A DNA stretch of 39,098 nucleotides from Macrostomum lignano (taxonomy: Eukaryota). The notes beneath the pieces were generated by a model that was not told the origin of the DNA, did not search any database, and saw only the letters and a list, made by a program, of their open reading frames with translations. Shown in pieces: positions 694-18,876 of the stretch. The DNA lies in contig NIVC01004657.1 in the NCBI GenBank assembly GCA_002269645.1, positions 1-39,098 of the forward strand. The letters are read 5' to 3'. Within the stretch, counting starts at the first letter, position 1. The number at the start of each line of letters is the position of its first letter. The translations under genes were made by a program, and so were the position numbers.

Positions 694-3600
694 TCGGACT
701 TCGCTCCCGAAGATTTCTCGGCAATGCCTGCACCGCTGCTGCTGGACATGCTGGAATCCAAGCTGGACTTCCCGCTGCACGCGCCGTCAAATCGAAACGG
801 GACGACGTTGTCTTCCTCTATTTGAGTCGGCACTTCAATCAAGTAAGCAATTTTTGCTTTAAAACATTTTGCTTTGGCTTAGACTTTAGCTTACTGAAGG
901 AATTGGCAATATCTGAAGGCTTATGATTTCATTTTCATTTGAAACCTGCGCGCATTGGCATTCCTGCCTGCAGGACCGGTCCAGCGTCAACCAGCTGGAC
1001 TCGAAAGGCGCGAGCACCCGCTGGGCCTGGCCCTCAGCCTCAAACTGGAGGGCATCGCCGAGAACCTGCTGGCGCACAACGCCAACCTCAACAGCCGCGA
1101 CCCTGACGGATTCTCGCTGCTGCACCGCGCCATCCGGGATGGTGAGCTCGACTGGCACTACTCACACTCACTCACTCACTCACTCACTCGCTCACTCACT
1201 CATTCACTCACTCACTCACTCATTCACTCACTCACTCACTCACTCATTCACTCACTAACTCACTCACCCACATTCACTCATTCGCTCATATATTCACTCA
1301 CACTCATTCACTCACTCACTCACTCACTCATTCACTCATTCACTCATATATTCACTCACTCACTCACTCACTCACTCATTCACTCACTCACTCACTCACA
1401 TTCACTCATTCGCTCATATATTCACTCACACTCATTCACTCACTCACTCACTCACTCACACACTCATTCACTCACTCACTCACTCACATTCACTCATTCA
1501 CTCATATTCACTCACACTCATTCACTCATTCACTCATATATTCACTCACACTCAATCGCTCACTCACTCACTCACTCACTCACTCACTCACTCACTCATT
1601 CACTCACTCACTCACTCACTCACTCACTCATTCACTCACTCACTCACTCACTCACTCACTCACTCACTCACTCACACACACTTTCTCACTCAGTCACTCG
1701 CTCTACCAGCTGTTCCCTTCACTACTACAAGCCATTATTCACTGGAATGAGTTCTCCAACTGCACCGAACGCCCGCCGGCCCGCAGAGGACGAATTCGCT
1801 GCCGCATTTCTCATCACCCGCGGATGCGACGTGAATTGCGAGGCGCCCGCCAACCGGCGCAGTCCGCTGCATCAGTGCGCCGCCGCGGTGTCCGACTGCC
1901 TGTTCAGCATCGCCGAGCAGCTCGTCATCAAGGGTGCGCGGGTCAACGCGCAGGACGCCGACGGCGCGTCGCCACTTCACCTGGCCGTGTCGGCCGGCAA
2001 CTCGAGCGTCTTCGGCTTGCTGCTGTCGCACCCGGACCTGGACGCCAACCTGGCGGACGCGGCTGGCAGCGTGCCGCTCTGGCTGACGCTGCGTCGAGTC
2101 GACTGCGGGCCCGGCGACGCCGAGGCCAGGCGGATGTGCGCCGAACTCGTGCGCAAAGGGGCGTCACCCGACGCGACTGGGACACGTTTCCATGGTGACA
2201 GTCTGTTGCACAGGTGAATGGATGGCTAAGCAACGGTTGCTATGCTGAGTATTGATGGGTTCTTCTGGTTGCTATGCGACAGTTGCTATTTTGAGTATTG
2301 ATGGGTTCCTCTGGTTGCTAGGCAACGGTTGCTATGCTGAGTATTGATGGGTTCTTCTGGTTGCTAGGCGACGGTTGCTATGCTGAGTATTGATGGATTC
2401 TTTTGGTTGCTAGGCGACGGTTGCTATGCTGAGTATCGATGGGTTTTTCTGGTTGCTATGCTGAGTATTGATGGGTTCTTCTGGTTGCTAGGTGACGGTT
2501 GCTATGCTGACTATGGATGGGTTTTTCTGGTTGCTATGCGATGATTGCTATGTTGAGTATTGATGAGTTCTTCTGGTTGCTAGGCGACGGTTGCTATGCT
2601 GAGTATTGATAGGTTCTTCTGGTTGCTAGAATGCTAGGCGACGGTTGCTATGCTGAGTATTTATGGGTTCTTTTGGTTGCTAGGCGATCGTTTTTTATTA
2701 GTGTCAACTTTAATAAGTTATTTTGGCTTCTACTTTGGTTATGGAGTTCTAGTTGCTACGGCAACGGTGGCTATTACTTCATGATCCCCATGCTAAAATA
2801 AAAATGCCTCATATCCCGCACTGCCAGGTGCGCCCGGGACCGGATGGAGCAGGCGGCCATCTACCTGTGCCAGCTGGGCGCCAAGCCGAACACCCGAAAT
2901 GAGAGGGGCGAGACACCGCTGCACACGGCCGCCCACCTGGGCCTGGCGGGCCTCGCCAAGGCGCTGCTGGCGGCTGGCGCGGACCCCAACACCCAGATGA
3001 CCGGCTGCCTGCAGCCCAGCGGCGAGTCCGACGTCACCATGCAGACCGCCATACACCTGGCCATCTGCGGTGGCCACAGGCAGCTTGTGCAGGTGGGGCT
3101 GAAATTCTGCCTGTGCTTTTTCCATGCTTACTGGCTCACATTGTCGATTATTCCAGTTATGTACATTTAATTTTACATGTCCATATGAGTTGTGATATTC
3201 CCATGTCGATATTACCATGTCGACATTCCCATGTCGATATGCCCATGTCAACATTCCCATGTCGATATTCCCATGTCGATATTCCTATGTCGATAATTTC
3301 AATGTCGATATTCCCATGTCGATATTCCCATGTCGATATTCCCATGTCGACATTCCCATGTCGACATTCCCATGTCGATATTACCATGTCGACATTCCCA
3401 TGTCGATATTCCCATGTCGATATTCCCATGTCGATAATTTCAATGTCGATATTCCCATGTCGATAATTTCCATGTTGATATTCCCATGTCGATAATTTCC
3501 ATGTTGATATTCCTATGTCGATAATTTCCATGTCGACATCCATGTCGATTCCATTCGCAGACTCTGCTGGTGTCCGACCTGAGTGTCCGCGACTCGCAGG

Positions 3601-6600
3601 GCAACTCAGCCTTCAGCCTGGCGCTGTGGAACGGGATGGTGGACGTGGCCGATCAGCTGCTCCGAGCCGGCGCCTGCATCAACGAGGCCAACGCCGAGGG
3701 CCTCAGCCTGCTGCAACAGGCGGTGCTGCTGCACTCGGCCAGGGCCGCCCTGTTCCTCATTGAGCACGGGGCCGACATTCACTACGTGTGAGCTGGGGGA
3801 GGTCGAATGAGTCACTTGTTTACTATGAGTGATTAAGGGTCATTTTTTGAGCTCATCAAGAAATGAGTCATACAGAGAGCTCATCAAAGTAATCATCATT
3901 TAGAATGAGTCATACAGAAAACTCACCAAAGTAATCATCATTTAGAATGAGTCATACAGAAAACTCATCAAAGTAATCATCATTTAGAATGAGTCATACA
4001 GAAAACTCATCAAAGTAATCATCATTTAGAATGAGCATACAGAAAACTCATCAAAGTAATCATCATTTAGAATGAGTCATACAGAAAACTCATCAAAGTA
4101 ATCATCATTTAGAATGAGTCATACAGAAAACTCATCAAAGTAATCATCATTTAGAATGAGTCATACAGAAAACTCATCAAAGTAATCATCATTTAGAATG
4201 AGTCATACAGAAAACTCATCAAAGTAATCATCATTTAGAATGAGCATACAGAAAACTCATCAAAGTAATCATCATTTAGAATGAGTCATACAGAAAACTC
4301 ATCAAAGTAATCATCATTTAGAATGAGCATACAGAAAACTCATCAAAGTAATCATCATTTAGAATGAGTCATACAGAAAACTCATCAAAGTAATCATCAT
4401 TTAGACTGAGTCATACAGAAAACTCATCCTAGTAATCATCATTTAGAATGAGTCATACAGAAAACTCATCAAAAGTTCATCATTTAGAATGAGTCATACA
4501 GAGCAGTAATAAAATACTCAACGAGAGTGAGTCATGCAGCGAAATAATAAATCAATTATTCACTATCGCCTCATGCCCAGAAACCCGTCAGGCGAGTCCA
4601 GCCTCCAGCTCGCCATCAAGGCGCAGCTGCCAGCCGTGGTGAAGGTGCTCTGCCAGCGGGGCGCCAACCTGGAGACCGGCTGCCCGCTCAGCCTGGCGCT
4701 GGAAGCTGGGCAGGAGGAGATGGCGGCCATCCTGATTGAGCACGGCGCCTCCGTGACCCCCTGGCTGCCGGGCCCGGAGGCCGGCCAGGAGCGCACGCTG
4801 CTGCAGCAGCTGCTGGATGGCGGCCAGGAGCGAAGCGCCGTCTTCCTCATCCGCCGCGGCGCCGAAGTCAATGTCATCACGAGGGGCTGCGAGGACAAGC
4901 AGACTCCCCTGCACGTGTGCGCGCAGTGGGGATTGGAGGTATGGGAGTTGGGGAGTGGAAGTGTGGGATATGTTGAGGTGGAGGTGTGGGAGTTGGGGAG
5001 TGGAGGTGTGGGAGTTGGGGAGTGGAATTGTGGGAGTTGGGGAGTGGAAGTGTGGGATTTGGGGAGTGGAAGTGTGGGATTTGGGGAGTGGAAGTGTGGG
5101 AGTTGGAGATTGGAGGTATGGGAGTTGGGGAGTGGAAGTGTGGGAGTTGGGGAGTGGAAGTGTGGGAGTTGGGGATTGGAGGTATGGGAGTTGGGGAGTG
5201 GAAGTGTGGGAGTTGGGGATTGGAGGTGTGGGAGTTGGGGAGTGGAGGTGTGAGATTTGAGGAGGTGGAGGTGTGGGAGTTGAGGAGTGGAGGTGTGGGA
5301 TTTGAGGAGGTGGAGGTATGGGAGTTGGGGAGTGGAAGTGTGGGATATGTTGAGGTGGAGGTGTGGGAGTTGGGGAGTGGAGGTGTGGGATTTGAGGAGG
5401 TGGAGGTGTGGGAGTTGGGGAGTGGAGGTGTGGGAGTTGGGGAGTGAAAGTGTGGGAGTTGGGGAGTGGAAGTGTGGGAGTTGGGGAGTGGAATTGTGGG
5501 AGTTGGGGAGTGGAAGTGTGGGAGTTGGGGAGTGGAAGTGTGGGTGTTAGGGAGTGGAAGTGTGAGAGTTGGGGAGTGGAAGTGTGGGAGTTGGGGAGTG
5601 GAAGTGTGTAGTTGGGGAGTGGAAGTGTGGGAGTTGGGGAGTGGAAGTGTGGGAGTTGAGGATTGGAGGTATGGGAGTTGGGGAGTGGAAGTGTGGGATA
5701 TGTTGAGGTGGAGGTGTGGGAGTTGGGGAGTGGAGGTGTGGGATTTGAGGAGGTGGAGGTGTGGGAGTTGGGGAGTGGAGGTGTGGGAGTTGGGGAGTGG
5801 AAGTGGGGAGTGGAAGTGTGGAGTTGGGGAGTGGAAGTGTGGGAGTTGGGGAGTGGAAGTGTGGGAGTTGAGGATTGGAGGTATGGGAGCTGGGGAGTGG
5901 AAGTGTGGGAGTTGGGGAGTGGAAGTGTGGGAGTTGGGGATTGGAGGTATGGGAGTTGGGGAGTGGAAGTGTGGGATATGTTGAGGTGGAGGTGTGGGAG
6001 TTGGGGAGTGGAGGTGTGGGATATGTTGAGGTGGAGGTGTGGGAGTTGGGGAGTGAAAGTGTGGGAGTTGGGGAGTGGAAGTGTGGGAGTTGGGGAGTGG
6101 AAGTGGGGAGTGGAAGTGTGGAGTTGGGGAGTGGAAGTGTGGGAGTTGGGGAGTGGAAGTGTGGGAGTTGAGGATTGGAGGTATGGGAGTTGGGGAGTGG
6201 AAGTGTGGGATATGTTGAGGTGGAGGTGTGGGAGTTGGGGAGTGGAGGTGTGGGATTTGAGGAGGTGGAGGTGTGGGAGTTGGGGAGTGGAGGTGTGGGA
6301 TTTGAGGAGGTGGAGGTGTGGGAGTTGGGGAGTGGAGGTGTGGGAGTTGGGGAGTGGAGGTGTGGGATTTGAGGAGGTGGAGGTGTGGGATTTAGGGAGG
6401 TGGAGTTGTGGAAGTTGGGGAGTGGAGGTGTGGGATTTGAGGAGGTGGAGGTGTGGGATTTAGGGAGGTGGAGTTGTGGAAGTTGGGGAGTGGAGGTGTG
6501 GGATATGTTGAGGTGGAGGTGTGGGAGTTGGGAAGTGGAGGTGTGGGATTTGGGGAGCGGAGGTGTGGGAGTTGGGGAGTGGAGGTGTGGGATTTGGGGA

Positions 6601-8039
6601 GGTGGAGATGTGGTATTTGGGAAAGTGAGGTGTGGGATTTGGGGAGTGGAGATGTGGGATTTGGGGAGTGGAGGTGTGGGATTTGGGGAGTAGAGGTGTG
6701 GGATTTGGGGAGTGGAGGTGTGGGATTTGGGGAGTGGAGGTGTGGGATTTGGGGAGTGGAGGTGTGGGATTTGGGGAGTACAGGTGTGGCATTTACAATC
6801 ACCACCGAACACCGCAGGGCGCCACCCACGCCCTCATCGAGCGCAACGCCGACGTGAACGCGCAGGACGCGGACGGCAACACGCCGCTGCACCTGGCCAT
6901 TCAGGGCGGCCACATGACGGTCGTCAGCCTGCTGCTGTCGCACCCGGGCCTCGACCTGCGCCTGCGCAACGCGCGCGGCGCCACGCCGTTCGCCTCCGCG
7001 ATGGAGTCGCGCAGCCAGCGAGTCGCTCAGGCTATCGTCGATCGCGAGCCGACGGCGCCGGAGCTGCGGGACAACCAGGTGCGATGGGATTCTCATTGTA
7101 GCCTGTCTGCATCACTCTGTCTCATTGTAGCCTGCCTGCATCACCTTGTGTCTCAATTGGGTTGCCTGCATCACTCTGTGTCTCAATTGGGTTGCCTGCA
7201 TCACTCTGTGTCTCGATTGGGTTGCCTTGGGTTGCCAGGGTTACATTTTAGCCTCATCAAATTGATCTCCTCCACCCCCAGGGCCGCAACTTTCTGCACA
7301 AGGCGGTGCTGAAGGCCGACCTGGACAGCGTCCTGTTCCTCATCTCAATCAGCGCCGATGTGAACTCGCGGGTTCGCGACCAGACCGAGCTCGCCCCGCT
7401 GCACCTCTGCGTCGCCGCGCCGTCCACTGACGCCACGTCGAGCGTGGCGCGTCACCTCCTGCTTGCTGGCGCCGACCCCAACGCCCGCACCAGCGGCCAG
7501 CGACGGACGCCGCTGCACCTGGCCTGCGCTGCCGGCAACTGCGACCTCGCCGGAATCCTGCTAGAGAACGAATCTGTCGAGGTGAACTGCACCGACGATG
7601 GCGGCGAGACTCCGCTGCACCTGGCGATGCGCGAGGGCCACCTGCCGGTCTGCCGCCTCCTCCTGCAGCAGCACCGCCGCCCGCGGCCGCAGCTGCTCAG
7701 CGCCGCCAACATCCGTGGCCAGACGCCGCTGCACCTGCTGGCTCAGTACGGCCGGGAGAACGCCGCCAGCATCTTCGACTGCGTGATGGCCGCCGAGCCG
7801 CAGACCAGCGTCGACTTGCCCGACGCTGAGGGCAACACGGCGCTGCTGCTGGCCTACATACAGGGCAACGTGCGGCTCTGCACCGCCCTGGTGCGGGCTG
7901 GTGCCAGCCTGGGGGCCATCAACAAGTACGGCAAGACCGTCTTCAACCACCAGGTGAGCTTGCTGTGTCTGTCTGCCTGTCTGTCTGTCTGCCTGTCTGT
8001 CTGTCTGTCTGTCTGTCTTTCTGTCTGTCTGTCTGTATT

Positions 8040-8094
<55 letters not shown>

Positions 8095-8147
8095 GCCTCT
8101 GTCTGTCCGCCTGTCTGCCTGCCTGTCTGCCTGCCTGTCTGCCTGCC

Positions 8148-8221
<74 letters not shown>

Positions 8222-8223
8222 CC

Positions 8224-8280
<57 letters not shown>

Positions 8281-8292
8281 TGTCTGTTTTAG

Positions 8293-8341
<49 letters not shown>

Positions 8342-8464
8342 TAGTGTCTGTCTGTCTGTCTTAGTGTCTGTCTTAGTGTCTGTCTGTCTGCCTGTCTGTC
8401 TGTCTGCCTGCCTGCCTGTCTGTCTGCCTGTCTGTCTGTCTGTCTGCCTGCCTGTCTGCCTGCC

Positions 8465-8525
<61 letters not shown>

Positions 8526-8572
8526 TAGTGTCTGCCTGTCTGTCTGTCTTAGTGTCTGTCTTTCTGTCTTAG

Positions 8573-8661
<89 letters not shown>

Positions 8662-8957
8662 TAGTGTCTGTCTTAGTGTCTGTCTGTCTGCCTGTCTGTC
8701 TGTCTGCCTGTCTGTCTGTCTGCCTGCCTGTCTGTCTGTCTTTCTGTCTGTCTGTCTGCCTGCCTGCCTGTCTGCCTGTCTGTCTGCCTGTCTGTCTGTC
8801 TGTCTGCCTGTCTGTCTGTCTGTCTGCCTGCCTGCCTGTCTGTCTGTCTGTCTGCCTGCCTGCCTGTCTGTCTTAGTGTCTGTCTGTCTCTGTGTGTGTG
8901 TGTCTGTCTGTCTGTCTGCCTGCCTGCCTGCCTGCCTGCCTGTCTGTCCGTCTGTCT

Positions 8958-8991
<34 letters not shown>

Positions 8992-9304
8992 CTGTCTGTC
9001 TCCAGTCTCCAGCCGCCCCTGCGCCACCACTCAGGTGCCAACCACCAGCAAGCAGCTGCTGCACACCCTGCTGGACATCCTGGACAAGGAGCCGGGCTGG
9101 GTGGACGGCGACTTCTGCCTGGAATGCGGCACCCGGTTCAGCCTGAAGACCCGCAAGCATCACTGCCGGCACTGCGGCCGCCTGCTATGCGCGAGCTGCT
9201 CCAAGCAGCAGTGCGCCATCGTGAAGTACGGCATGCGCAAGCCGGAGCGGGTCTGCCAGTTCTGCTTCGACTACATCACCTGCCGCTACGGAGTGTCCGA
9301 TTGA
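694..9304 (+). CDS. ANKFY1: Ankyrin repeat and FYVE domain protein 1 (Rabankyrin-5), 5'-partial (BTB-encoding exons lie upstream of the window); two apparent frameshifts near 781 and 1010
   Basis: Exons with GT-AG ends and matching phases: 694-842, 974-1141, 1787-2213, 2828-3092, 3561-3787, 4581-4938, 6818-7078, 7282-7953, 9035-9304 (TGA). Peptides [61 protein letters not shown] and the C-terminal FYVE motif [19 protein letters not shown] are collinear with human ANKFY1 as I recall it. Confidence 0.95.
1160..1700. repeat. (CACT)n/(CATT)n microsatellite in ANKFY1 intron 1142-1786
   Basis: Tetranucleotide run seen directly. Confidence 0.97.
2231..2688. repeat. ~46-bp intronic minisatellite (gacggttgctatgctgagtattgatgggttcttctggttgctaggc)
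   Basis: About 10 tandem units inside intron 2214-2827. Confidence 0.95.
3195..3550. repeat. 14-bp intronic minisatellite (cccatgtcgatatt)
   Basis: Tandem units running up to the acceptor at 3560. Confidence 0.95.
3860..4500. repeat. 42-bp intronic minisatellite (agaatgagtcatacagaaaactcatcaaagtaatcatcattt)
   Basis: About 15 near-identical units in intron 3788-4580. Confidence 0.96.
4927..6790. repeat. G-rich degenerate minisatellite (ggggagtggaagtgtgggagtt and variants) filling intron 4939-6817
   Basis: Seen directly. The many overlapping VWELGS/PTPPLP ORFs here are translations of this repeat. Confidence 0.96.
7095..7230. repeat. Short ~30-bp tandem repeat (gcctgcatcactctgtgtctcaattgggtt), 3-4 copies
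   Basis: Seen in intron 7079-7281. Confidence 0.8.
7965..9000. repeat. (CTGT)n/(CTGC)n microsatellite in the last ANKFY1 intron (7954-9034)
   Basis: About 1 kb tetranucleotide run. Confidence 0.97.
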
Positions 9305-9336
9305 CGCATTCAATTTTTTTATGACGTTACGTCTTG

Positions 9337-9342
9337 AATAAA
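9337..9342 (+). terminator. Probable polyadenylation signal AATAAA of ANKFY1
   Basis: AATAAA 33 nt after the stop codon, followed by a T-rich tract. Confidence 0.6.
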
Positions 9343-9404
9343 ATTGTTTTGCCTTGAAATTCTCCATGAAATATGCGATTCCCTTTTAAATTTATATTGA
9401 AATT

Positions 9405-10315
9405 CCCCAGTGATCAAGTGAGAAATTACCTAATGATCAAGTGAGAAATTCCCCAATAAACAAGTGAGCAATTCCCCAAAAATCAAGTGAGCGATTCCCC
9501 AATAATCAAGTGAACAATTCCCCAGTGAGCAAGTGAGCAATTCCCCAATAATCAAGTGAGCAATTCCCCAATAATCAAGTGAGCAATTCCCCAGTAATCA
9601 AGTGAGCAATTCCCCAATAATCAAGTGAGCAATTCCCCAATAATCAAGTGAGCAATTCCCCAATAATCAAGTGAACAATTCCCCAGTGAGCAAGTGAGCA
9701 ATTCCCCAATAATCAAGTGAGCAATTCCCCAATAATCAAGTGAGCAATTCCCCAGTAATCAAGTGAGCAATTCCCCAATAATCAAGTGAGCAATTCCCCA
9801 GTGAGCAAGTGAGCAATTCCCCAATAATCAAGTGAGCAATTCCCCAGTGAGCAAGTGAGCAATTCCCCAATAATCAAGTGAGCGATTCCCCAATAAGCAA
9901 GTAAGCAATTCCCCAATAAGCAAGTGAGCAATTCCCCAGTAATCAAGTGAGCAATTCCCCAATAATCAAGTAAGCAATTCCCCAATAAGCAAGTGAGCAA
10001 TTCCCCAATAATCAAGTGAGCAATTCCCCAGTGAGCAAGTGAGCAATTCCCCAATAATCAAGTGAGCGATTCCCCAATAAGCAAGTAAGCAATTCCCCAA
10101 TAAGCAAGTGAGCAATTCCCCAATAATCAAGTGAGCAGTTCCCCAATAATCAAGTAAAAAATTCCCCAATGAGCAAGTGAGCAATTCCCCAGCAATCAAG
10201 TGAGCAGTTCCCCAATAATCAAGTGAGCAGTTCCCCAATAATCAAGTAAAAAATTCCCCAATGAGCAAGTGAGCAATTCCCCAGCAATCAAGTGAGCAGT
10301 TCCCCAATAATTAGC
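9405..10315. repeat. 23-bp minisatellite (aatcaagtgagcaattccccaat)
   Basis: About 40 tandem units downstream of ANKFY1. Confidence 0.96.
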
Positions 10316-10925
10316 AATAATCAATCAAGTGATCATAATCTTGATTCCTTCTCAACCTTGAAGCGACCGTCACAAACAAGACTTTCTGGCTGTGGCAGTT
10401 CGAAGTTGTTTTCGCTGGATTTGATCTCACAGTAAAACAAAATAAGCCAGGAAATCGCAGGTCACCGAAGGCTGACATTCTCAGCACCAACTGCCTGACT
10501 TCTACAGGCGGATCGATCTTTAGTTTATTATTTTATTAAAATTTTGATTGTCTGGTCTTGTTCTAGCACAATATGCTCCTGCTTTATAAATATGCTTCAA
10601 TAATTGATCATTTATGGATTAGAATTTTTAGTAATTATAAGTTCGCGCAGAGACTTTTGTATTTTTCAATAAATCATTCTGGTTTTCACTGCGTGGCTGA
10701 TCTTGCAAGACGATTCTCCGTCATACGAGTACTTGCTGATTTTGCAATTGTTAATTTACGAGTATATATACAACCTTGATTCGTTCAATTCAGTTCAATT
10801 ATTTCATGTAGCTACTGAAGTGAGTAGTGTGTTTTGAATTTTTGCACTTTAATTGTTTGGAGAACTTTAAAGTTCAAAGCAATTTAGTGAGAGCTGTTAT
10901 TGAAGCTTTGGGAAGCTTTCATTAA

Positions 10926-11020
10926 ATGGCGCCAATCACCGCGCTCTCTTCATGGCGCCAATCACCGCGGGCTCTTCATGGCGCCAATCACTACGCGCTC
11001 TTCATGGCGTCAATCACCGC
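10926..11020. repeat. 26-bp tandem repeat (atggcgccaatcaccgcgctctcttc), ~4 copies
   Basis: Seen directly. Confidence 0.8.
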
Positions 11021-11801
11021 GCACGCTGCAAGTGACACGGCGTGATGGTCAGAGTTCGGACAACGGTAGCAAGACGGTGAAATCACTATGTAACTAACGC
11101 GCTGGGCAGCCCGAGAAGTCTGAGATGAGAATGTACATGTACAAGATTAAAAATTGACACTCAACTGCGCACAGAACTGCACTGCACTGCGCACTGCGCA
11201 CCCGGCTTCCGTGATACTCAGAGAAAGCAAGTGCGTGTGCGCTTCGAATTCCTCGGCGAATTGCCGCCATGCTGTAGAATGTTGCAATGTTGCCGTGTTG
11301 CAACAGTGTTGCAATTTAAAGTGTTCCAATTTACAGTGCTGCAATCTAGTGTTGCAACGCCCAGGGTTGCAATCTACATGTACAGGGTTGCAATCTACAT
11401 GTTCAGGGTTGCAATTCTACATGTACAGGGTTGCAATGTACAGGTTTCCAATGTACAATGTAAAATTGTTCAAATTGCAATTTTTCCAGCCTTCTGTCCG
11501 ATCCAGTGGCAGCTTTTAATGAACTGCTGCTTGAAGATTTTTGCTTGACTTGATAAACGGCTTTGGCTTGGCTTCCCGTTGAAAAATTATGGAAACATTT
11601 ACAGGAACTTTTGCCTATGAAAGTTACCAAAAAGTTACCATTCTCGCAGCCAATCGGAAGGCGTACGCGTTAGGAAACATTTACACACATAGCCAATCAG
11701 AGGGCCGGAATATGGTAACTTTTGGCAGAAAAGTTACCAAAAGTTACCATTTCAAATTTACACGTACGGGGATAGGGAGTTCCCAAAAGTTCCCAAAAGT
11801 T

Positions 11802-12125
11802 GCCATTGATGTTTCCATTCGCTTCTGGTGAGAAGCTCCCAAAAGTTACCAAAAGTTGCCATTGATGTTTCCATTCGTTTCTGTTGAGAAGCTCCCATAA
11901 GTTCCCAAAAGTTGCCATTGATGTTTCCATTCGTTTCTGTTGAGAAGCTCCCATAAGTTCCCAAAAGTTGCCATTGATGTTTCCATTCGTTTCTGTTGAG
12001 AAGCTCCATAAGTTCCCAAAAGTTGCCATTGATGTTTCCATTCGTTTCTGTTGAGAAGCTCCCATAAGTTCCCAAAAGTTGCCATTGATGTTTCCATTCG
12101 CTTCTGGTGAGAAGCTCCCAAAAGT
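11802..12125. repeat. 56-bp subterminal tandem repeat x6 in the TIR element
   Basis: Units start at 11802, 11858, 11914, 11970, 12026 and 12082. Confidence 0.95.
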
Positions 12126-12748
12126 TACAATTGATGGTTTAATTTGCCTATTGTAAGAAAATTGCTTAGGCTGACAATTTCCCATTGTAATAATTATTCA
12201 CTTCTGATTAAAAGCAAATAGAAGTTAAGGTAAAATTCTCTCAAGAGTTTTGAGTTTGGTAGTGGATCTGGGTAACAAAATGGGAGAAACAGTTTGTTAG
12301 GTGTGTATTTATAACACTGTAAATGCAAAAAATGCTGATTGGCTAGTAGTTTGTAGCAGTGAAAAAAGAAGGAAACAGCAGTATGAGAATGCAATATAAC
12401 GACTTAACGTAACAATGAAAAACATAAAAAGATTACCAAAAGCACACTATACATAGTAAATGCAGTGTGAGTATTGATGAAGAGAAAGAACAACAATGTC
12501 ATCCAAATTAAATTCAAACAAAAGTTAACGTGGAGCAAAAAATGTAAGGCAAAGGTAATCTAGTTGAATTTAAACAGTTTCAACAATGGAACAGCAATTC
12601 ATTTAACAATTAAAAAAATATTTTGATTCCCGTACACTAATCCCGGCACATGTTTGACGCAGTTGCAATTAGTCGAAAACGAATAGCCGTAAAGCTTATT
12701 AGCAGCAGCATACGAGTACACGGACTGGGGAATATTACAAAAAACTGT

Positions 12749-14302
12749 CTAGGTTTCGCGAACATTTCTCTTTGATCTCTTTGAGCTCCGAGAAGGTTGC
12801 TGCTTTGTTCGCTTCTCCCCTTTTTTTATTGTCCCGCCGCCACTTAGCGCACTCGTCTTGGTTGAGGAGGACTGATCGGTCCCGCCGCTTCTTAGCGCAC
12901 TCGTCTCGGTTGAGGAGGACTGATCGGTCCCGCCGCTTCTTAACGCACTCGTCTCGGTTGAGGAGGACTGATCGGTCCCGCCGCTTCTTAGCGCACTCGT
13001 CTCGGTTGAGGAGGACTGATCGGTCCCGCCGCTTCTTAGCGCACTCGTCTCGGTTGAGGAGGACTGATCGGTCCCGCCGCTTCTTAGCGCACTCGTCTCG
13101 GTTGAGGAGGACTGATCGGTCCCGCCGCTTCTTAGCGCACTCGTCTCGGTTGAGGAGGACTGATCGGTCCCGCCGCTTCTTAGCGCACTCGTCTCGGTTG
13201 AGGAGGACTGATCGGTCCCGCCGCTTCTTAGCGCACTCGTCTCGGTTGAGGAGGACTGATCGGTCCCGCCGCTTCTTAGCGCACTAGAATCGATCCTTTT
13301 CTTTTTCCGGCGGGCATCCAACGAGCAATATTTGAATGAATTGCGGAAAAGACCGTCTGGTAGAGGATTAGGAGAAGCAGCTGTGAGGAACTGAGTAATT
13401 GTCCTCACAATATGACAATTCGCTGGCATACGAATTTGCTGCTTCTTGGCCATGCCAGACACGGTAGTCACGCACAATTCCGAGGTCGAAAAAGGGGAAC
13501 GAATGAGGAGTCTGGTGAGCTTTCGCAACTGCTTGTCACCCGGCTCGCGACGGAGTTCAGCGACCGCATGCTCAATAGCTGCCTTCTGCTCTCTTGTAAT
13601 AGTCACGTTCGGGGCGGACGCCAGAAGCGGCACTCGTTGGTCTTCTCCCAGAATCTCGGATATGACCTCGATCGATGGGGAAGCGTGAATAGCAGGAGCT
13701 ACCGAAGCTGGGGTTTGGCTTGTTGCAAGGCTTTGAGCGGCAAAGTCTTGCATAATCCGAATAACGTTGGATTGAAATTCGGATGATTCGCCAGTCGTTC
13801 TGAGACGATCAATTTCTTGGCGCAGGTCATCCATCTCAGCATTAGCCACCTCCAAGCGCCTCTGCGTCGACTTGTGCGCATCCACCTCCTTCAGTAGCAA
13901 GTCGTGCCTTTCAGACGCTGCCGCTTTGGCGCTTTGAAGCTCGTTTTTGAGCCTGTCCATCTGCTCCTCGACAACGGCCATCTTTCGGTGCAGCACGCTG
14001 CAACTATCGCAATCCAAGTCGATGCAATAAGTTTCGTCTGGCAATTGACAACACTGCATAGCGCGAGACGCAGCCTCCTTGTTATCGAACGGGCCCTTTA
14101 ATAGTTCCGCCTGTAGCAGCTGAGGCTTTGTGTGTCGTGTGTTGTGGGACGATAAGTTCACCAACACTTTCGCGAATTGCTGTGTAGGCGCTGGTGACGG
14201 TTTCACTATTCTCCTTACAGATATTGCATAGCATTGTCTATTGTTAGTTTCTGTGCCTTGAACTACCCAGAATGGTGGGTTTTCGTAAGACAAGCTTGCC
14301 AT
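12749..14302 (-). CDS. 517-aa intronless protein: N-terminal beta-rich region, coiled coil (aa ~105-170), BEN-like domain (aa ~225-335), 16-aa repeat tail and basic C-terminus
   Basis: Uninterrupted ATG-to-stop ORF. The segment VTITREQKAAI..LRKLTRLLIRSPFSTSELCVTTVSG..IVRTITQFL..FKYCSLDARRKKK fits the BEN pattern (Ll..lF..eEL...s..G...C...RR) by eye. Not confirmed by HMM. Confidence 0.75.
   Translation of the reverse strand: MASLSYENPPFWVVQGTETNNRQCYAISVRRIVKPSPAPTQQFAKVLVNLSSHNTRHTKPQLLQAELLKGPFDNKEAASRAMQCCQLPDETYCIDLDCDSCSVLHRKMAVVEEQMDRLKNELQSAKAAASERHDLLLKEVDAHKSTQRRLEVANAEMDDLRQEIDRLRTTGESSEFQSNVIRIMQDFAAQSLATSQTPASVAPAIHASPSIEVISEILGEDQRVPLLASAPNVTITREQKAAIEHAVAELRREPGDKQLRKLTRLLIRSPFSTSELCVTTVSGMAKKQQIRMPANCHIVRTITQFLTAASPNPLPDGLFRNSFKYCSLDARRKKKRIDSSALRSGGTDQSSSTETSALRSGGTDQSSSTETSALRSGGTDQSSSTETSALRSGGTDQSSSTETSALRSGGTDQSSSTETSALRSGGTDQSSSTETSALRSGGTDQSSSTETSALRSGGTDQSSSTETSALRSGGTDQSSSTKTSALSGGGTIKKGEKRTKQQPSRSSKRSKRNVRET
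12833..13285 (-). repeat. 48-bp coding minisatellite (~9.5 copies) encoding SALRSGGTDQSSSTET
   Basis: Near-identical in-frame units within the ORF. Confidence 0.96.
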
Positions 14303-17300
14303 AACTAGTGTTTTAGTGGGTCTTGGTTAATCTCGGTTGACGTAGGGAGAACGGCCTCTTGGCGCTCTAACAACTGTAGAGCGTAGTCGTCGGTCGATGT
14401 GGCCCTCGAATTTGGTAATCTGCAATCTGGAATGGTAGATTATGAATAATATTGATGTGGCAGCATTGATATAAAATCGAGTAACATTGATAAGGTAATC
14501 CTGCAAATGTTGTAGTGAGTGCATGAGTTGCACAGAAGTTTAACTAAAGGAATTACTAACGCAGACAATCCATGCATTTTTAATGGGATATTAGCTGGGC
14601 CAGAATTTGAAAATTAATACTTTATTATTATGGCGGTGTGGAGTGATGAGGTCTGAGACATGAGAATCTAGGGGATATAAAAAACAGGAAACGCAACCGA
14701 TAAACTTAAAGCGTGCTTAACCTATAAACATGATGCTCAGCAAAATTAGCTTGTTGTGTATGAAACAGATAAGTTGAGATCAGTTGAGGGGGTAAATAAA
14801 AAAGCCGTAAGATAGGTTTCTCAAGTGAATTAATAATTTCACGTCATATTTTATATTACATATTTACTTCAAATGCAACATCGCTGAGGTTTGGCGCGAG
14901 TAGGGTAGGGTATTAAGAGGAGATTACTATTAGGAAAAATATTATTAGCAAAGTAAGGATGGGTGGAGGATGATGAGAAATAGACCGACGAGATAGAGAG
15001 GTGGGAGAGGAAGAGTAGAAGGGGGAAGACGATGGTGGTGAGGAAGATGGGAATGAGGTAGAAGATGGCACGGGGAAGAAGCGAGGATGCAGTGATTTAA
15101 CAATGGGTTGAATTTCATTGTTGATAGTATGCAAAACCTATTCACAATCTGGGTTACTGGGTTACTGGTGTTGACTTTAAAGAAAAATTATTATCTTCTC
15201 TTAACTAAATATATAAAACACAAAACTCTATCCATGTGTCTGTGTGTGTGTGTGTGCGTCTGTGTAGCCGCTTTATTTATTTTTAAAGTGGCTACACAGA
15301 TTATTATTCACACAGATTACACAGATTATTATTCCCATATTGGTACAGTAGAGCATGTGCTGGCAACCCAATAACCAGAGTAAACTTCTATCTAATTAGG
15401 GATAAATCTGAAATATTCAATATCTTAGAAACCTTTTCTTGGTTTACCTTCAAATTTTCAGTGGAGTCTAGTTATATTATGACATATATTTGACAATATA
15501 TATAATATATAAAGTCAATACATATAATTTCTTGCGTATTAATACAAAAATGTGATTCTGATTTTCAGATAAATAAGTAGACCAATTTTGGATTTGCTCC
15601 AACAAGGTAAAATTAAATTATCTAAGACTGAAAATGTGTGAGTACAGAAGCAACTTCATAATGTAACCTATAGACTAATACCATTCTTTACCATTGTACA
15701 ATTAAATCCAGTCATAAAATAATACCAAATTTTATATGTAAAGGCTACAACAGGCAGACTACTATTATTTTATACAAAATTAACTGTATAGAATCTTAGA
15801 ATTATGAGTCTAGATTATTGTAAAAATTGTAAAAAAAGTCTTTATGCATAAATATAAAAATAAATAAGATAAAATATCAGTACTTCAAGAATCCCAGGAT
15901 CATTTTAAAACATATTTAAATTTCATAACAATGCAAATCATATTTCATGAAGACAATTATTGTATACAATTATATACTAATTCTTGCTTTATTAGAACTA
16001 AAGCTTCTTTCATAATATTTCTATCTAGAGCTTTAATAAGTCTGGTTTTACCAATTCAAATCAGAGTTTTAATTGATAAAGACCTTTGTTTCATGACCTT
16101 TATACTCACATGACCATCTTAATCACATATATACATTTGACCATCACATGGAATTGTCCAGGTATTATATAGTTTTAGCAGGCTAACAAGTAATGGCTGA
16201 TCAAACTAGGTTAAAATTATATATGCATATATACTAGAAAGTATCATAAAAATTGCATTTAACTACTATAGTGATATAGTACAAAGGACATACTTAGTGG
16301 CAATGCCAAAAATATTGTAGTTATAATTTTTTGACTATAATGCCATGCAAATACAAAATTAAAAAATTAAAGTTAAAATTAGTATTTATTCCTATAACCT
16401 GTTTGGTTCAGCTTGTTTTGGTTAATGCAACAAAAAGATACAAATTTAATACATTAATATAGTGCTTCTGCTTAATTTCTGCTTAATTTTGACTGATTAA
16501 AATAACCTCAGTTGAAATATATTTTCATACTCATTAAGTTCTAATACTTAATTTCCAAAATTGCAAATTGGCATATGAATGCACATTTTTTAATAAAAAG
16601 TTACTTAGCTATTTCTACTGATACATGCAGTTCATTCATATCAGTCTAATTTAGTTTAAATTTTTACAAAACAACTTTTCTGAGTGTGTAATAGAAAACA
16701 TGGATTGTCGTACCTGGTTAATATGACATTATGATCAGGAATTGTGTACTTGAAAAATAAGAAATATTACCACTATGTCTAGTTCCTAGTTCATGCCTAT
16801 AATTATCAACCTACTTTTGCATAATTTACCTTAGCAAACAAGCAAAACTAGACGCTAATTTCTTTAAAATAAAAAACGACTATGTGATGCTATCTAAACA
16901 CTATCACGTATTAACATACATTGTATGTACCCTGGATGTTCGTTAATAAAAAGTAAGATTTCATATAGGCCTAGCTAAAATTAACACCTGCATACAAACT
17001 CTACGGAAGTTCCATCTGTAAATTCGATTATGATCTATAGAAAACGATTTAGTATAGGTGGATTTATGAGAGTCACGAGAGTCTGGAGATATTACACAAA
17101 GATAACATCATAATGTAACACATTAAGTAAATTATCTTCCCAGGTTGCCTAAGATGTCTGATGATAAGCGCAATATCAGAATATAGCTACTAGTATGGCC
17201 GCTGATGGTGCACGCCATGACTGGCGCATCAGTCATTTAAAATAGATCGATATATTGGGCAGATAAATTTAACTTTTAACAAATACCATCATCGGCATGA

Positions 17301-18876
17301 TACTTATTAAACATAGTTCCGACCTTTAAAGTTGCTTTCGAGAACTTCTACTGCATTCATAATTTAATTAACATTGTACTTGTTCTTTCCGAGGCACACC
17401 TCATATGAAAATTACCAGATGTTACCAATTTATTAGAAAAGTTCCCAAAAGTTTCCGTACGTAATGAGTCATGCAGGGCGCCCGCCACTCATGAGGCCAC
17501 TGATAAGTTACCATAAGTTGCCGAAAATTCCCAAAAACTCACCAAAAAGTGCTAAAAGCTACCAAAAGTTTCCTAAATGTTGCCATTTTTTTACCTCTCC
17601 AAAAAGTTACCAAAAGTTACCATTCGCCGCGCTCAATGTTCCTAAAAGTTGCCAAACAGATAGCCAATCAGCGCACGCCACGGCGGCGCCCACCTCTTAA
17701 ACTTGAAAAGTAACCACAAGTTACCAAAATTTACCACTATTTAGCCATAAATTGCCATAAGCTACCAAATGTTCCCACAAATTGTTCCCATAATTTTTCA
17801 ACGGGTTTTGTCTTTTATCAAGTTGAAGGTTTTGCATACATAGGTGGTTTAGAAGATCCACTCATTAAAGGTAATAAATGAAAAGAACCGAATTCCGAAT
17901 AGAGCTGATCAGAAAGTTGTTCTTTACTTCAGAATTAAATAGCAGATTAATTCCTAACTACACTACTTATTTTGCACGCTTTTCAGTAGCAGCTAACGCA
18001 TGTTTTCTTTATCAATCAATACATAAACAGTGTCAAAAAAATTAAAAAATGCCAACTGATAGGTATTTAAATTTTATTCACAGTGACGATAAACTCGCAT
18101 GCACACTTGAAATGAACTGCCTCAATAAAAACAAAGGAAAACCTGCAGTTCCCAGTCCAGCCGGCTCCAATTTCTCGTGGTGCTAAAAGAGGCCGCCCTT
18201 TTAGCTACAACTTGCAAGGCAGATTTGCTTTTCAGCATCTCGAGAGAGTGGAGCATCGGCTTCGACATGCTTGTGAGCGAGTCGAGCAGTTGCTAGGGGG
18301 GGGCTACTCGAATACTCACCTCAGCGCCTGCCGCTGCTTCGGGCTTCTTCTTCTCCTGCTCAGCCTTGCCCCTCTCCTTGCCCTGCCGGTCTCGCATGAG
18401 CTTAAATAAAGCAAAACTGCCGCCTGCCCAGACTCGGCCGGCGGTTGAGGAAACGGGAGAGGGGAAGAGGAGGAGGTGGACAGTTCACAGGCTGCTCACA
18501 GGCTGCTCACAGGATGCCCAGCACGTTCTCCGCCTCGCCTCTTCTCCCCGCATGCCTTCCCCAGCTCTGGCCGTCTCGAGAGGTGAGTGTGTCAGCCCCC
18601 GAGCCGCTCCTGCACAGGGGGGGCGCTGATCCCCCGGCAGTGGGATTTGCGGATTAGCAGTCCCTCCCCACCTCTCCACCCGCCCGGATGAGCGCCGCCC
18701 CCGTCGTGTCCCCCGCCCGCCACTGCAGACCTTGAAAAATATTTCTTCTTTTCCTCGGATCCGCTCCTATCGGCCTCCCAGACACGGAACTGGAGCCACC
18801 CCCGCAGAGAAGCGATTTCGGACACTATTGCTGCTCCAATCCTCTCTCGGGCCTGCTCTCAAATCCCCAGTTCTCG

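What the first reader, a model, noticed from the sequence alone, without database searches (positions are those of the whole stretch)
11575..17805. TIR transposon that carries a BEN-like DNA-binding gene instead of a transposase
Seen: 18-bp perfect (22/23) TIRs starting CCCGTT, TT flanks, dense AAAAGTT(A/C/G)CC subterminal arrays at both ends, and one intact 517-aa ORF with coiled coil plus BEN-like domain. Established: plant CACTA/EnSpm elements use a second protein (TnpA) that binds subterminal repeats, and BEN domains are sequence-specific DNA-binding chromatin factors. Inference: this may be an animal CMC-type system in which a BEN protein plays the TnpA role, or acts as an anti-silencing or insulator factor, mobilised by a transposase in trans. 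It could also be a source of domesticated BEN genes.
Basis: partly seen in the sequence, partly recalled or inferred. Interest (0 to 1): 0.8.

Follow-up and report, generated by a model that had tools for sequence, protein, structure and literature searches.

The report
Deletion copy of two-gene flatworm transposon
This is a real, recently mobile cut-and-paste DNA transposon of the flatworm Macrostomum lignano: the window copy lost its 946-residue putative transposase gene in a 4.1-kb internal deletion, but it keeps both ends and the family's second gene, an orphan coiled-coil protein whose "BEN-like" DNA-binding domain has only weak support.

Summary
Window 11575-17805 is bounded by 26-nt terminal inverted repeats (TIRs; 18 nt perfect) and TT/TT flanks. 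It has dense (A/T)AAGTTNCC arrays at both ends only, and one intact 517-aa ORF. The window is the whole M. lignano contig NIVC01004657.1.

Two further copies on other contigs (L001, L004) have identical termini, unrelated flanks and 2-3-bp target-site duplications (TSDs: GA, AGT). They are 10.0-10.4 kb long. Each carries an extra 4.1 kb with an intact 946-aa ORF, plus an upstream exon used by one ORF2 gene model. The window copy is therefore an internal-deletion, non-autonomous derivative of a two-gene element. It is not a transposon built around a BEN gene instead of a transposase.

The 946-aa ORF contains the CMC motif string D..D-19-CxxC..LH..H(4)H-20-E (2.3% of shuffles). It matches no Pfam, PDB, Chapaev3 or plant-CACTA sequence, and the termini are CCCGTT, not CAC.

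ORF2 is an orphan: only its own copies were found among 1.84 billion representatives. UniProt names it "BEN domain-containing", but Pfam, PDB and AlphaFold/Foldseek tests did not reproduce this. Targeted tests gave p of about 0.0005-0.02.

Verdict: a new variant of a known kind. A TnpA-like role for ORF2 is plausible but untested.

The parts
11573..11574 (.). Left target-site duplication (TT)
   Evidence: Sequence read. The matching TT lies at 17806-17807. The other copies have GA/GA (L001) and AGT/AGT (L004).
11575..11600 (.). Left terminal inverted repeat. This is the 3' end of the element in gene orientation. It starts CCCGTTGAAAAATTATGG.
   Evidence: The same 18 nt form all six termini of the window, L001 and L004 copies.
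11601..12131 (+). Left subterminal array of (A/T)AAGTTNCC motifs. It includes two or three inverted copies next to the TIR and a 56-bp tandem array (11781-12126, 6.2 copies) with two motifs per unit.
11649..11700 (+). Two CCAAT-box-like GCCAATC(A/G)G sites (11649-11657 and 11692-11700). A third lies at 17663-17671 (+) and an inverted one at 12335-12343.
   Evidence: The reading as NF-Y-type promoter boxes is inference from the consensus only.
12749..14302 (-). ORF2, 517 aa, intact. It consists of a Cys-rich N-terminus, a coiled coil, a BEN-like helical domain, nine 16-aa Ser/Thr-rich repeats and a basic tail.
   Evidence: It is 99% identical to BOX15_Mlig026393g5/g3, which UniRef names 'BEN domain-containing protein'. 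It is intact in L001 (549 aa) and L004 (469 aa).
13733..14005 (-). Coiled-coil segment of ORF2 (aa ~100-190)
   Evidence: Only weak coiled-coil-family Pfam hits (SOGA, TPR_MLP1_2) cover aa 102-196.
13295..13636 (-). BEN-like region of ORF2 (aa ~223-336). The core is LRKLTRLLIRS(P)FSTSELCVTTVSG. The window copy has a private L270P change here.
   Evidence: No Pfam or PDB hit. Targeted tests: a consensus probe scored 9.5 bits, above 2000/2000 shuffles. A 4-sequence BEN HMM gave p=0.013 (an earlier build scored no better than shuffles). hhalign gave P=0.012, with 4 of 200 shuffles scoring higher. L270P.
12831..13285 (-). 48-bp in-frame coding tandem repeat (SALRSGGTDQSSSTET). The window has 9 units, L001 has 11 and L004 has 6.
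12752..12835 (-). Basic C-terminal tail of ORF2 (KKGEKRTKQQPSRSSKRSKRNVRET), possibly a nuclear localisation signal
   Evidence: Translation. It is conserved in the diverged metagenome copy L002. The NLS role is inference.
14353..14424 (-). Small exon used by the alternative ORF2 gene model (P0002). It has an AG acceptor and a GT donor. Exon 1 of that model lies in the segment deleted from the window copy.
15150..15156 (.). Internal-deletion junction. L001 5061-9152 (4.1 kb: the 946-aa ORF1 and exon 1 of the P0002 model) is missing. Five filler bases repeat the adjacent TAACC.
   Evidence: In L001 the left breakpoint sits in a perfect 10-bp hairpin, AGTAACCCAG-ttatc-CTGGGTTACT.
15157..17408 (-). 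AT-rich (29% GC) non-coding 5' region. It is retained from the full-length element, where it lies upstream of ORF1.
17409..17779 (+). Right subterminal array of (A/T)AAGTTNCC-type 10-bp units. It runs into the TIR.
17780..17805 (.). Right terminal inverted repeat. This is the 5' end of the element in gene orientation.
17806..17807 (.). Right target-site duplication (TT)

Best explanation
**Shown.** Window 11575-17805 is a non-autonomous copy of a young TIR DNA-transposon family of Macrostomum lignano.
- Full-length members are 10.0-10.4 kb and carry two same-strand genes between CCCGTTGAAAAATTATGG termini.
- ORF1 encodes 946 aa. ORF2 encodes 469-549 aa: a coiled coil, a small helical C-terminal domain, a variable Ser/Thr repeat and a basic tail.
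- The window copy lost ORF1 in a 4.1-kb internal deletion with filler DNA at the junction. This is the usual product of interrupted gap repair after excision.
- It kept both TIRs, both subterminal (A/T)AAGTTNCC arrays and an intact ORF2.

**Inferred.**
- ORF1 is the DDE transposase, of CMC (CACTA/Mirage/Chapaev) type. It makes staggered cuts that leave 2-3-bp target duplications.
- The window copy can move only if ORF1 is supplied in trans by copies such as L001 or L004.
- ORF2 is the element's accessory DNA-binding protein. It would dimerise through its coiled coil, bind the repeated subterminal motifs through its BEN-like domain, and bring the ends together or recruit and regulate the transposase. 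TnpA does this in En/Spm, and the Myb-like protein does it in PIF/Harbinger.
For: **Mobility**
- Three TIR-bounded copies sit on three contigs of one assembly, with unrelated flanks and identical 18-nt termini.
- TSDs are TT, GA and AGT. The chance of a 2- or 3-bp match at all three copies is about 4e-4 (my calculation).
- Copies are 98.8-99.8% identical.
- Older decayed fragments also exist: L005 at 87-94% identity and L002 at ~77%.
- Gene tags Mlig026393g1, g3 and g5 imply at least 5 loci.

**Deletion derivative**
- Alignment to L001 breaks at window 15150/15156, which corresponds to L001 9153/5060. Five filler bases lie between, and the missing segment has no TIR or TSD at its edges.

**ORF1**
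- It is intact at 946 aa in both long copies, with 5 aa differences.
- It has a zinc ribbon, CLNC-x12-CSSC.
- The motifs are D370 (VDGF), D459 (MDAP), +19 to C478xxC481, L566-H567, H711-x4-H716 and +20 to E736.
- This is the C(2)C / LH / H(3-4)H string that PMC12730594 and the PMC4079192 supplement give as diagnostic of CMC/Transib.
- The loose pattern occurs in 117 of 5000 shuffles of ORF1.
- D2-to-CxxC spacing is 19 residues in ORF1. Positions for Chapaev3 Garfield_BM are listed.

**ORF2**
- It is present and intact in all three complete copies.
- Its only relatives among 1.84 billion representative proteins are its own copies.
- UniRef names it 'BEN domain-containing protein'.
- The layout, a coiled coil followed by a single C-terminal BEN-like domain, resembles BEN-solo factors (my knowledge).

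**Candidate binding sites**
- 25 motif copies occur only in the two ends.
Against: **ORF1**
- No Pfam family matches at E<=10, whether scanned whole or in five pieces.
- There is no PDB sequence match.
- There is no similarity to Chapaev3 Garfield_BM.
- There is no significant similarity to a plant CACTA probe that itself scores 375 bits on Transposase_21. 175 of 2000 shuffles did as well.

**Termini and TSD**
- Termini are CCCGTT...AACGGG. CMC elements normally end in CAC...GTG or CA...TG (PMC4079192, PMC12730594).
- TSD length varies (2, 2 and 3 bp) on only three copies.

**BEN**
- No Pfam BEN or DUF4806 hit and no PDB BEN hit.
- The AlphaFold models had pLDDT 40 and 51, and Foldseek found no BEN structure.
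- My BEN consensus probe was written from memory after I had seen ORF2, so its p-value may be biased.

**Other**
- Nothing shows that ORF2 binds DNA, or which protein recognises the motifs.
- The motifs point the same way at both ends, unlike a simple symmetric arrangement.
- The window ORF2 has a private L270P change in the putative domain core.
Confidence: 0.65

Rival explanations
1. The element is a two-gene transposon, but ORF2 is not a BEN protein and does not bind the ends. It could be a coiled-coil regulator (an inhibitor or scaffold), or a selfish passenger. ORF1's own N-terminal or zinc-ribbon region would then recognise the subterminal motifs.
For: - No BEN hit by Pfam, PDB or Foldseek.
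- The 4-sequence BEN profile scores are marginal.
- ORF1 has a zinc ribbon and a 270-aa N-terminal region of unknown function.
Against: - The UniProt rule-based name is BEN.
- The alignment to BEN is collinear over nearly the whole domain, and the score beats 2000/2000 shuffles.
- The gene is kept intact in every complete copy.
Confidence: 0.3
2. ORF1 is the transposase but belongs to a superfamily other than CMC, possibly an undescribed one. The CMC-like motif string would then be coincidental.
For: - Termini are CCCGTT, not CAC.
- No Transposase_21/DUF4218 hit, no Chapaev3 similarity, and the plant-CACTA probe is not significant.
- The loose motif pattern still occurs in 2.3% of shuffles.
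Against: - The motif order and the D-19-CxxC spacing fit CMC, and the 2-3-bp TSD lies within the CMC range (PMC12730594).
- Dense subterminal repeats and a second gene are CACTA hallmarks.
Confidence: 0.25
3. The short 6.2-kb form is ancestral, and the 4.1-kb segment with ORF1 in L001/L004 is a nested insertion of a different element.
For: A length difference alone cannot give the direction. The left edge of the segment in L001 lies in a 10-bp hairpin.
Against: - The segment has no TIRs or TSD at its edges.
- The window junction carries 5 filler bases that duplicate the adjacent sequence, which is typical of deletion repair.
- Exon 1 of the P0002 ORF2 model lies inside the segment and splices to exons outside it, with proper AG/GT signals.
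- Two independent loci share the identical long structure.
- Without the segment the family has no transposase candidate.
Confidence: 0.05
4. ORF2 is a host gene captured by the transposon (a Pack-type transduplicate), not a transposon gene.
For: Transposons do capture host fragments, and ORF2 GC content (54%) differs from the AT-rich remainder (29-39%).
Against: - No host paralogue exists. Searches of 5.8 billion clusters and 1.84 billion representatives found only element copies.
- Every locus recovered lies within the element or a fragment of it.
Confidence: 0.05

Closest known systems
En/Spm (CACTA) of maize and its dSpm/I deletion derivatives
   Same: - Short TIRs plus dense arrays of a ~10-12-bp subterminal motif at both ends.
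- Two element-encoded proteins: a large transposase (TnpD) and a smaller protein that binds the subterminal repeats (TnpA).
- Very short TSD.
- Internal-deletion copies that keep the ends and move only in trans.
- One ORF2 gene model splices from an upstream exon across intervening sequence.
   Different: - Termini are CCCGTT, not CACTA.
- TSD is 2-3 bp rather than a fixed 3 bp.
- ORF1 gives no Transposase_21/DUF4218 match.
- ORF2 has no similarity to TnpA (Transposase_24).
- The host is an animal.
Animal CMC elements: Chapaev and Mirage
   Same: - Animal hosts.
- The C(2)C, LH and H(4)H motif set in the same order.
- 19-residue D-to-CxxC spacing in ORF1, compared with the Garfield_BM positions.
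- TSD of 2-4 bp.
   Different: - Chapaev has invariable CAC...GTG termini and a single ~550-aa transposase (PMC4079192).
- No detectable pairwise similarity.
- This family has a second gene and long subterminal arrays.
PIF/Harbinger two-gene transposons
   Same: A transposase plus a separate DNA-binding protein is needed to bring the transposase to subterminal sites. TSD is short (3 bp).
   Different: - The Harbinger transposase (DDE_Tnp_4) and the Myb/SANT partner would both be seen by Pfam, and neither is.
- The TWA target preference is absent.
BEN-solo DNA-binding factors (Insensitive, Elba1/2, BEND5/6)
   Same: - A coiled coil followed by one C-terminal ~90-aa helical domain.
- The core F-x-x-x-E-L...(S/T)-G pattern aligns.
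- UniProt labels ORF2 as BEN.
   Different: - No significant HMM or structure match here.
- ORF2 is encoded by a mobile element, carries a variable Ser/Thr repeat, and has no host orthologue.

Membership tests
Class II TIR (cut-and-paste) DNA transposon | Terminal inverted repeats at both ends | tested here: met
   26 nt at 92% complementarity, 18 nt perfect. Identical in three copies.
Class II TIR (cut-and-paste) DNA transposon | Target-site duplication flanking each insertion | tested here: met
   TT/TT, GA/GA and AGT/AGT. Length is 2-3 bp, based on only three copies.
Class II TIR (cut-and-paste) DNA transposon | Several copies at unrelated loci | tested here: met
   Window, L001 and L004 have unrelated flanks. 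Fragments L005 and L002 also exist.
Class II TIR (cut-and-paste) DNA transposon | Element-encoded DDE transposase in autonomous copies | tested here: inconclusive
   A 946-aa ORF is intact in L001 and L004 and has a D/D/E-type motif string. No HMM or structure match was found.
CMC superfamily (CACTA/EnSpm-Mirage-Chapaev) | 5'-CAC(TA)...GTG-3' (or CA...TG) termini | tested here: not met
   Termini are CCCGTT...AACGGG. The norm is taken from PMC4079192 and PMC12730594.
CMC superfamily (CACTA/EnSpm-Mirage-Chapaev) | TSD of 2-4 bp | tested here: met
   2, 2 and 3 bp.
CMC superfamily (CACTA/EnSpm-Mirage-Chapaev) | [quoted passage not shown] | tested here: inconclusive
   All are present in the right order. 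The loose pattern is found in 2.3% of shuffles. A tighter pattern shared with Garfield_BM occurs in 0 of 5000 shuffles, but it was defined post hoc.
CMC superfamily (CACTA/EnSpm-Mirage-Chapaev) | Sequence homology of the transposase to known members (Pfam Transposase_21/DUF4218; Chapaev) | tested here: not met
   No Pfam hit at E<=10. No similarity to Garfield_BM. The validated plant-CACTA probe was not significant.
BEN domain (Pfam PF10523 / DUF4806 subtype) | Match to the family HMM | tested here: not met
   No PF10523 or DUF4806 hit at E<=10, on the whole ORF or on the 114-aa segment, with either L or P at position 270.
BEN domain (Pfam PF10523 / DUF4806 subtype) | Similarity to BEN domains of known structure | tested here: inconclusive
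   phmmer against PDB found none. A 4-sequence HMM of BEND6, Insv, Bsg25A and BANP gave 3.4 bits, with 26 of 2000 shuffles as high. hhalign gave P=0.012, with 4 of 200 shuffles higher. A memory-written consensus probe that does retrieve PDB BEN chains gave 9.5 bits, with 0 of 2000 shuffles as high.
BEN domain (Pfam PF10523 / DUF4806 subtype) | BEN fold (small all-alpha domain) | tested here: inconclusive
   Single-sequence AlphaFold models had pLDDT 40 and 51. They were all-helical with four helices, but Foldseek against PDB found no BEN structure. No deep alignment is possible because only self-copies exist.
BEN domain (Pfam PF10523 / DUF4806 subtype) | Sequence-specific DNA binding | not testable with these tools
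   Needs EMSA, SELEX or DAP-seq.
PIF/Harbinger | DDE_Tnp_4 transposase, Myb/SANT partner, TWA 3-bp TSD | tested here: not met
   No such Pfam hits. TSDs are TT, GA and AGT.

The most novel reading that the evidence does not exclude
A previously undescribed animal lineage of CMC-like DNA transposons with non-CAC termini. Its obligatory second gene encodes a BEN-type DNA-binding protein that recognises the AAAAGTTNCC subterminal arrays, so it would be a functional analogue of TnpA. If so, BEN would join THAP, BED, Myb/Harbinger and CENP-B/pogo as DNA-binding domains with a transposon-borne form. That would give a concrete route by which host BEN-solo repressor and insulator proteins could have been domesticated.
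Probability: 0.25. Interest if true: 0.75.

Novelty: new variant of a known kind. Interest (0 to 1): 0.45.

Why it matters
Two-component DNA transposons, with a transposase plus an end-binding accessory protein, are well studied in plants (En/Spm) and in PIF/Harbinger. They are poorly documented for animal CMC-type elements.

This family looks young. It has intact genes in two copies and a natural non-autonomous derivative, and its host is a flatworm in which stable transgenesis is available (PMC8717057). Trans-mobilisation and the accessory-protein hypothesis could therefore be tested directly.

If the BEN assignment holds, this would be a transposon-borne BEN gene. I found no paper in the searchable library describing a BEN protein as a transposon accessory gene. 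That would bear on the origin of BEN chromatin factors. It may also relate to the expansion of the BEN-subtype DUF4806 alongside transposase domains in Hydra (PMC7642931).

If the assignment fails, this remains an ordinary, well-delimited transposon family with an orphan second gene.

Tried and rejected
**BEN tests on ORF2**
- Pfam scans of ORF2, whole and by segment, gave only coiled-coil noise.
- PDB sequence searches with ORF2 found no BEN chains.
- The exhaustive representative search with the BEN-like region returned only the family's own proteins, so no deep alignment could be built.
- Two single-sequence AlphaFold runs had low confidence, and Foldseek hits were meaningless.

**ORF1 classification**
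- No Pfam hit for ORF1 whole or in five pieces, and no PDB hit.
- BLASTP and phmmer against Chapaev3 Garfield_BM, taken from the PMC4079192 supplement, found nothing.
- A plant CACTA probe written from memory and validated on Pfam was not significant against ORF1 by phmmer or hhalign.
- Three search for homologous proteins attempts with ORF1 segments timed out. The fourth returned only a 92%-identical metagenome fragment, P0007.

**Searches for more copies**
- The metagenome scan with ORF1 found no relatives.
- The 18-nt TIR in metagenome contigs gave 20 exact hits. All are chance: none extends beyond 18 nt or has motif arrays.

**Ideas dropped**
- That the flanks of the insertion form the TIRs of a host element. 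The match is only 10 bp with E=0.75.
- That there is an upstream coding exon for ORF1 in the 2.6-kb AT-rich 5' region. No ORF was found there.
- One PDB search merely repeated.

Full report
**Source of the window.** The 517-aa ORF is 99% identical to Macrostomum lignano protein BOX15_Mlig026393g5. An exact look-up places it on contig NIVC01004657.1 of assembly GCA_002269645.1. That contig is 39,098 bp long, so it is the window itself. The DNA is therefore from a free-living flatworm with a very repeat-rich genome; one search lists dozens of minisatellites in the window.

**Check of the observation.**
- The terminal inverted repeats are real. Arms 11575-11600 and 17780-17805 are 26 nt and 92% complementary.
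- The first 18 nt, CCCGTTGAAAAATTATGG, are perfect. They occur only at these two places in the window (expected 0.03).
- TT lies directly outside both arms.
- AAAAGTTVCC occurs 16 times against 0.45 expected.
- The looser (A/T)AAGTTNCC occurs 25 times, all within 11620-12083 and 17438-17653, and never in the remaining 32.9 kb.
- Much of the left array is a 56-bp tandem repeat (11781-12126, 6.2 copies).
- Apart from two or three inverted copies next to the left TIR, the motifs point the same way at both ends.
- ORF 12749-14302 (-) is intact at 517 aa. Residues ~100-190 give only coiled-coil-type weak hits.

**It is a mobile element with longer relatives.** The cluster of the ORF has four members from four contigs, with gene tags g1, g3 and g5. 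This implies at least five annotated loci. I fetched three of them.

| Copy | Contig | Element | Length | Identity to L001 | TSD |
|---|---|---|---|---|---|
| Window | NIVC01004657.1 | 11575-17805 | 6,231 bp | 99.5-99.8% | TT / TT |
| L001 | NIVC01000581.1 | 2406-12826 | 10,421 bp | reference | GA / GA |
| L004 | NIVC01004357.1 | 2417-12418 | 10,002 bp | 98.8% | AGT / AGT |

- All three have the same 18-nt termini. Similarity stops exactly at the TIR ends, and the flanks are unrelated.
- A 2- or 3-bp direct repeat at all three insertions has a chance probability of about 4e-4 (my calculation). The TSD is therefore real but 2-3 bp long.
- L005 (NIVC01000038.1) holds an older fragment at 87-94% identity. 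It is truncated at both ends and lies within the span of a DER1-like gene model.
- A JGI metagenome contig (L002) holds a ~77%-identical, frameshifted relative. In it the BEN-like and repeat regions are deleted.

**The window copy is a deletion derivative.**
- The window aligns to L001 in two blocks: 11575-15150 and 15156-17806.
- L001 5061-9152 (4.1 kb) has no counterpart in the window.
- Five filler bases at the junction repeat the adjacent TAACC.
- In L001 the left breakpoint lies in a perfect 10-bp hairpin.
- The missing segment has no TIR or TSD of its own. This argues for a deletion, as in Ac/Ds or Spm/dSpm, and not for a nested insertion in the long copies.
- The lost segment contains a 946-aa ORF (L001 5235-8075). 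It is intact in both L001 and L004, with five amino-acid differences between them.
- The segment also contains exon 1 (L001 8224-8403) of an alternative ORF2 gene model, P0002. Its other exons remain in the window, with proper AG/GT signals.

**What ORF1 is.** Every homology test on ORF1 came back negative.
- There was no Pfam hit at E<=10, whether ORF1 was scanned whole or in five pieces.
- There was no PDB sequence hit.
- There was no similarity to Chapaev3 Garfield_BM from the PMC4079192 supplement.
- A plant CACTA probe that itself scores 375 bits on Transposase_21 gave no significant similarity. 175 of 2000 shuffles did as well, although the best local alignment paired the DGF(N)PF...(W/C)PV...(N/E)LP stretches.

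The case for a transposase rests on the following observations.
- ORF1 has a zinc ribbon, CLNC-x12-CSSC.
- It carries, in order, D370, D459, C478xxC481 (19 residues after D459), L566-H567, H711-x4-H716 and E736 (20 residues after H716).
- A loose version of this pattern occurs in 2.3% of shuffles of ORF1.
- A tighter pattern shared with Garfield_BM occurs in none of 5000 shuffles, but I defined it after seeing both sequences.

Taken with the 2-3-bp TSD, the subterminal repeats and its position in the element, I read ORF1 as the transposase (about 0.9) and as CMC-like (about 0.7). The termini (CCCGTT, not CAC) and the failed HMM tests mean I cannot file it as a CMC member.

**What ORF2 is.**
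- It is present and intact in all three complete copies: 517, 549 and 469 aa. The length differences come from 9, 11 and 6 units of an in-frame 48-bp repeat.
- It is an orphan. The word-indexed search and the exhaustive search of 1.84 billion representatives found only its own copies. A captured host gene is therefore unlikely.
- UniRef names two members 'BEN domain-containing protein'.
- I could not reproduce that name with Pfam, PDB sequences, or AlphaFold plus Foldseek. The models had pLDDT 40 and 51 and gave no BEN hit.

Targeted tests gave weak but consistent support.

| Test | Result |
|---|---|
| HMM of four PDB BEN domains | 3.4 bits; 26 of 2000 shuffles as high |
| Earlier build of the same HMM | no better than shuffles |
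| hhalign | P=0.012; 4 of 200 shuffles higher |
| BEN consensus probe written from memory | 9.5 bits; 0 of 2000 shuffles as high |

- The consensus probe does retrieve BEND6, Insv, BANP, NAC1, BEND3 and Bsg25A from the PDB. It aligns collinearly over positions 22-98 of 102.
- I wrote that probe after seeing ORF2, so its result may be biased.
- I put the BEN assignment at about 0.6.
- The window copy has a private L270P change in the most conserved stretch, LLIRS(L>P)FSTSEL.

**Mechanism.**
- Shown: this is a TIR element with 2-3-bp TSDs, two genes in full-length copies, and a young non-autonomous deletion copy in the window that keeps all cis elements.
- Inferred: ORF1 cuts and pastes. The window copy moves only with ORF1 supplied in trans by copies such as L001 or L004.
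- Inferred: ORF2 dimerises through its coiled coil and binds the repeated subterminal motifs. It would pair the ends or recruit the transposase, as TnpA does in En/Spm and the Myb-like protein does in PIF/Harbinger.
- The GCCAATC(A/G)G boxes in both ends may be promoter elements. That is also inference.

**Comparison and novelty.** The element works like En/Spm with its dSpm derivatives, and it shares its motif string with animal Chapaev. It differs in several respects:
- its termini;
- the lack of detectable transposase homology;
- a second gene unrelated to TnpA;
- its flatworm host.

Searches of the held literature found no paper describing a BEN protein as a transposon accessory gene. A Hydra genome paper lists DUF4806, which PMC11075544 calls a BEN subtype, as expanded together with transposase domains. 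Transposon-borne BEN-like genes may therefore be more common than described.

I rate this a new variant of a known kind, with moderate interest. The structural conclusions are firm. The two family assignments that would make it remarkable, CMC and BEN, remain unproven.

Noticed in passing
L005 8954-11447 (NIVC01000038.1), compared with L001 9800-12400: The old truncated copy differs from the young copy at 104 of 1801 aligned sites. 83 differences are G>A or C>T in the direction young to old. 58 fall on CpG sites, which make up only 188 of 1801 positions. This CpG-decay signature suggests cytosine methylation or deamination acting on old transposon copies in M. lignano.
   Followed up: partly
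window 12831-13285; L001 11018-11568; L004 11018-11328: The 48-bp coding tandem repeat in ORF2 varies between copies (9, 11 and 6 units) but stays in frame. The NCBI 389-aa gene models splice most of it out, probably because a transcript from a short-repeat copy was mapped onto them.
   Followed up: partly
window 13493-13495 (ORF2 codon 270): The window copy has a private Leu-to-Pro change in the most conserved stretch of the BEN-like region. L001, L004 and P0002 all have Leu. The ORF2 of this non-autonomous copy may be impaired.
   Followed up: no
window 11649-11657, 11692-11700, 17663-17671 (+); 12335-12343 (-): GCCAATC(A/G)G sites that match the NF-Y-type CCAAT-box consensus lie in both ends of the element, next to the AAAAGTTACC dimers. 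Only two other matches occur in the window.
   Followed up: no
L002 (JGI metagenome 3300040801, contig Ga0450804_0826007) and P0007 (JGI, 1.4-kb contig): Environmental metagenome contigs hold relatives of both element genes: ORF2 at ~77% nucleotide identity and frameshifted, and ORF1 at 92% amino-acid identity. Macrostomum-like DNA carrying a sister family is therefore present in public metagenomes.
   Followed up: partly
window 955-9304 (+): Exons of an ankyrin-repeat/FYVE gene are separated by very large minisatellite and microsatellite arrays, for example 4927-6789 (22-bp unit, 83 copies) and 7966-9001 (TGTC, 258 copies).
   Followed up: no
window 28477-29448 (+): An ORF with a Mab-21 C-terminal (HhH/H2TH-like) domain, E=1.6e-9. 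This is a Mab-21/cGAS-like family gene downstream of the element.
   Followed up: no
L001 5050-5080: A perfect 10-bp hairpin (AGTAACCCAG ttatc CTGGGTTACT) lies exactly at the left breakpoint of the deletion that produced the window copy. It may have promoted the deletion.
   Followed up: no
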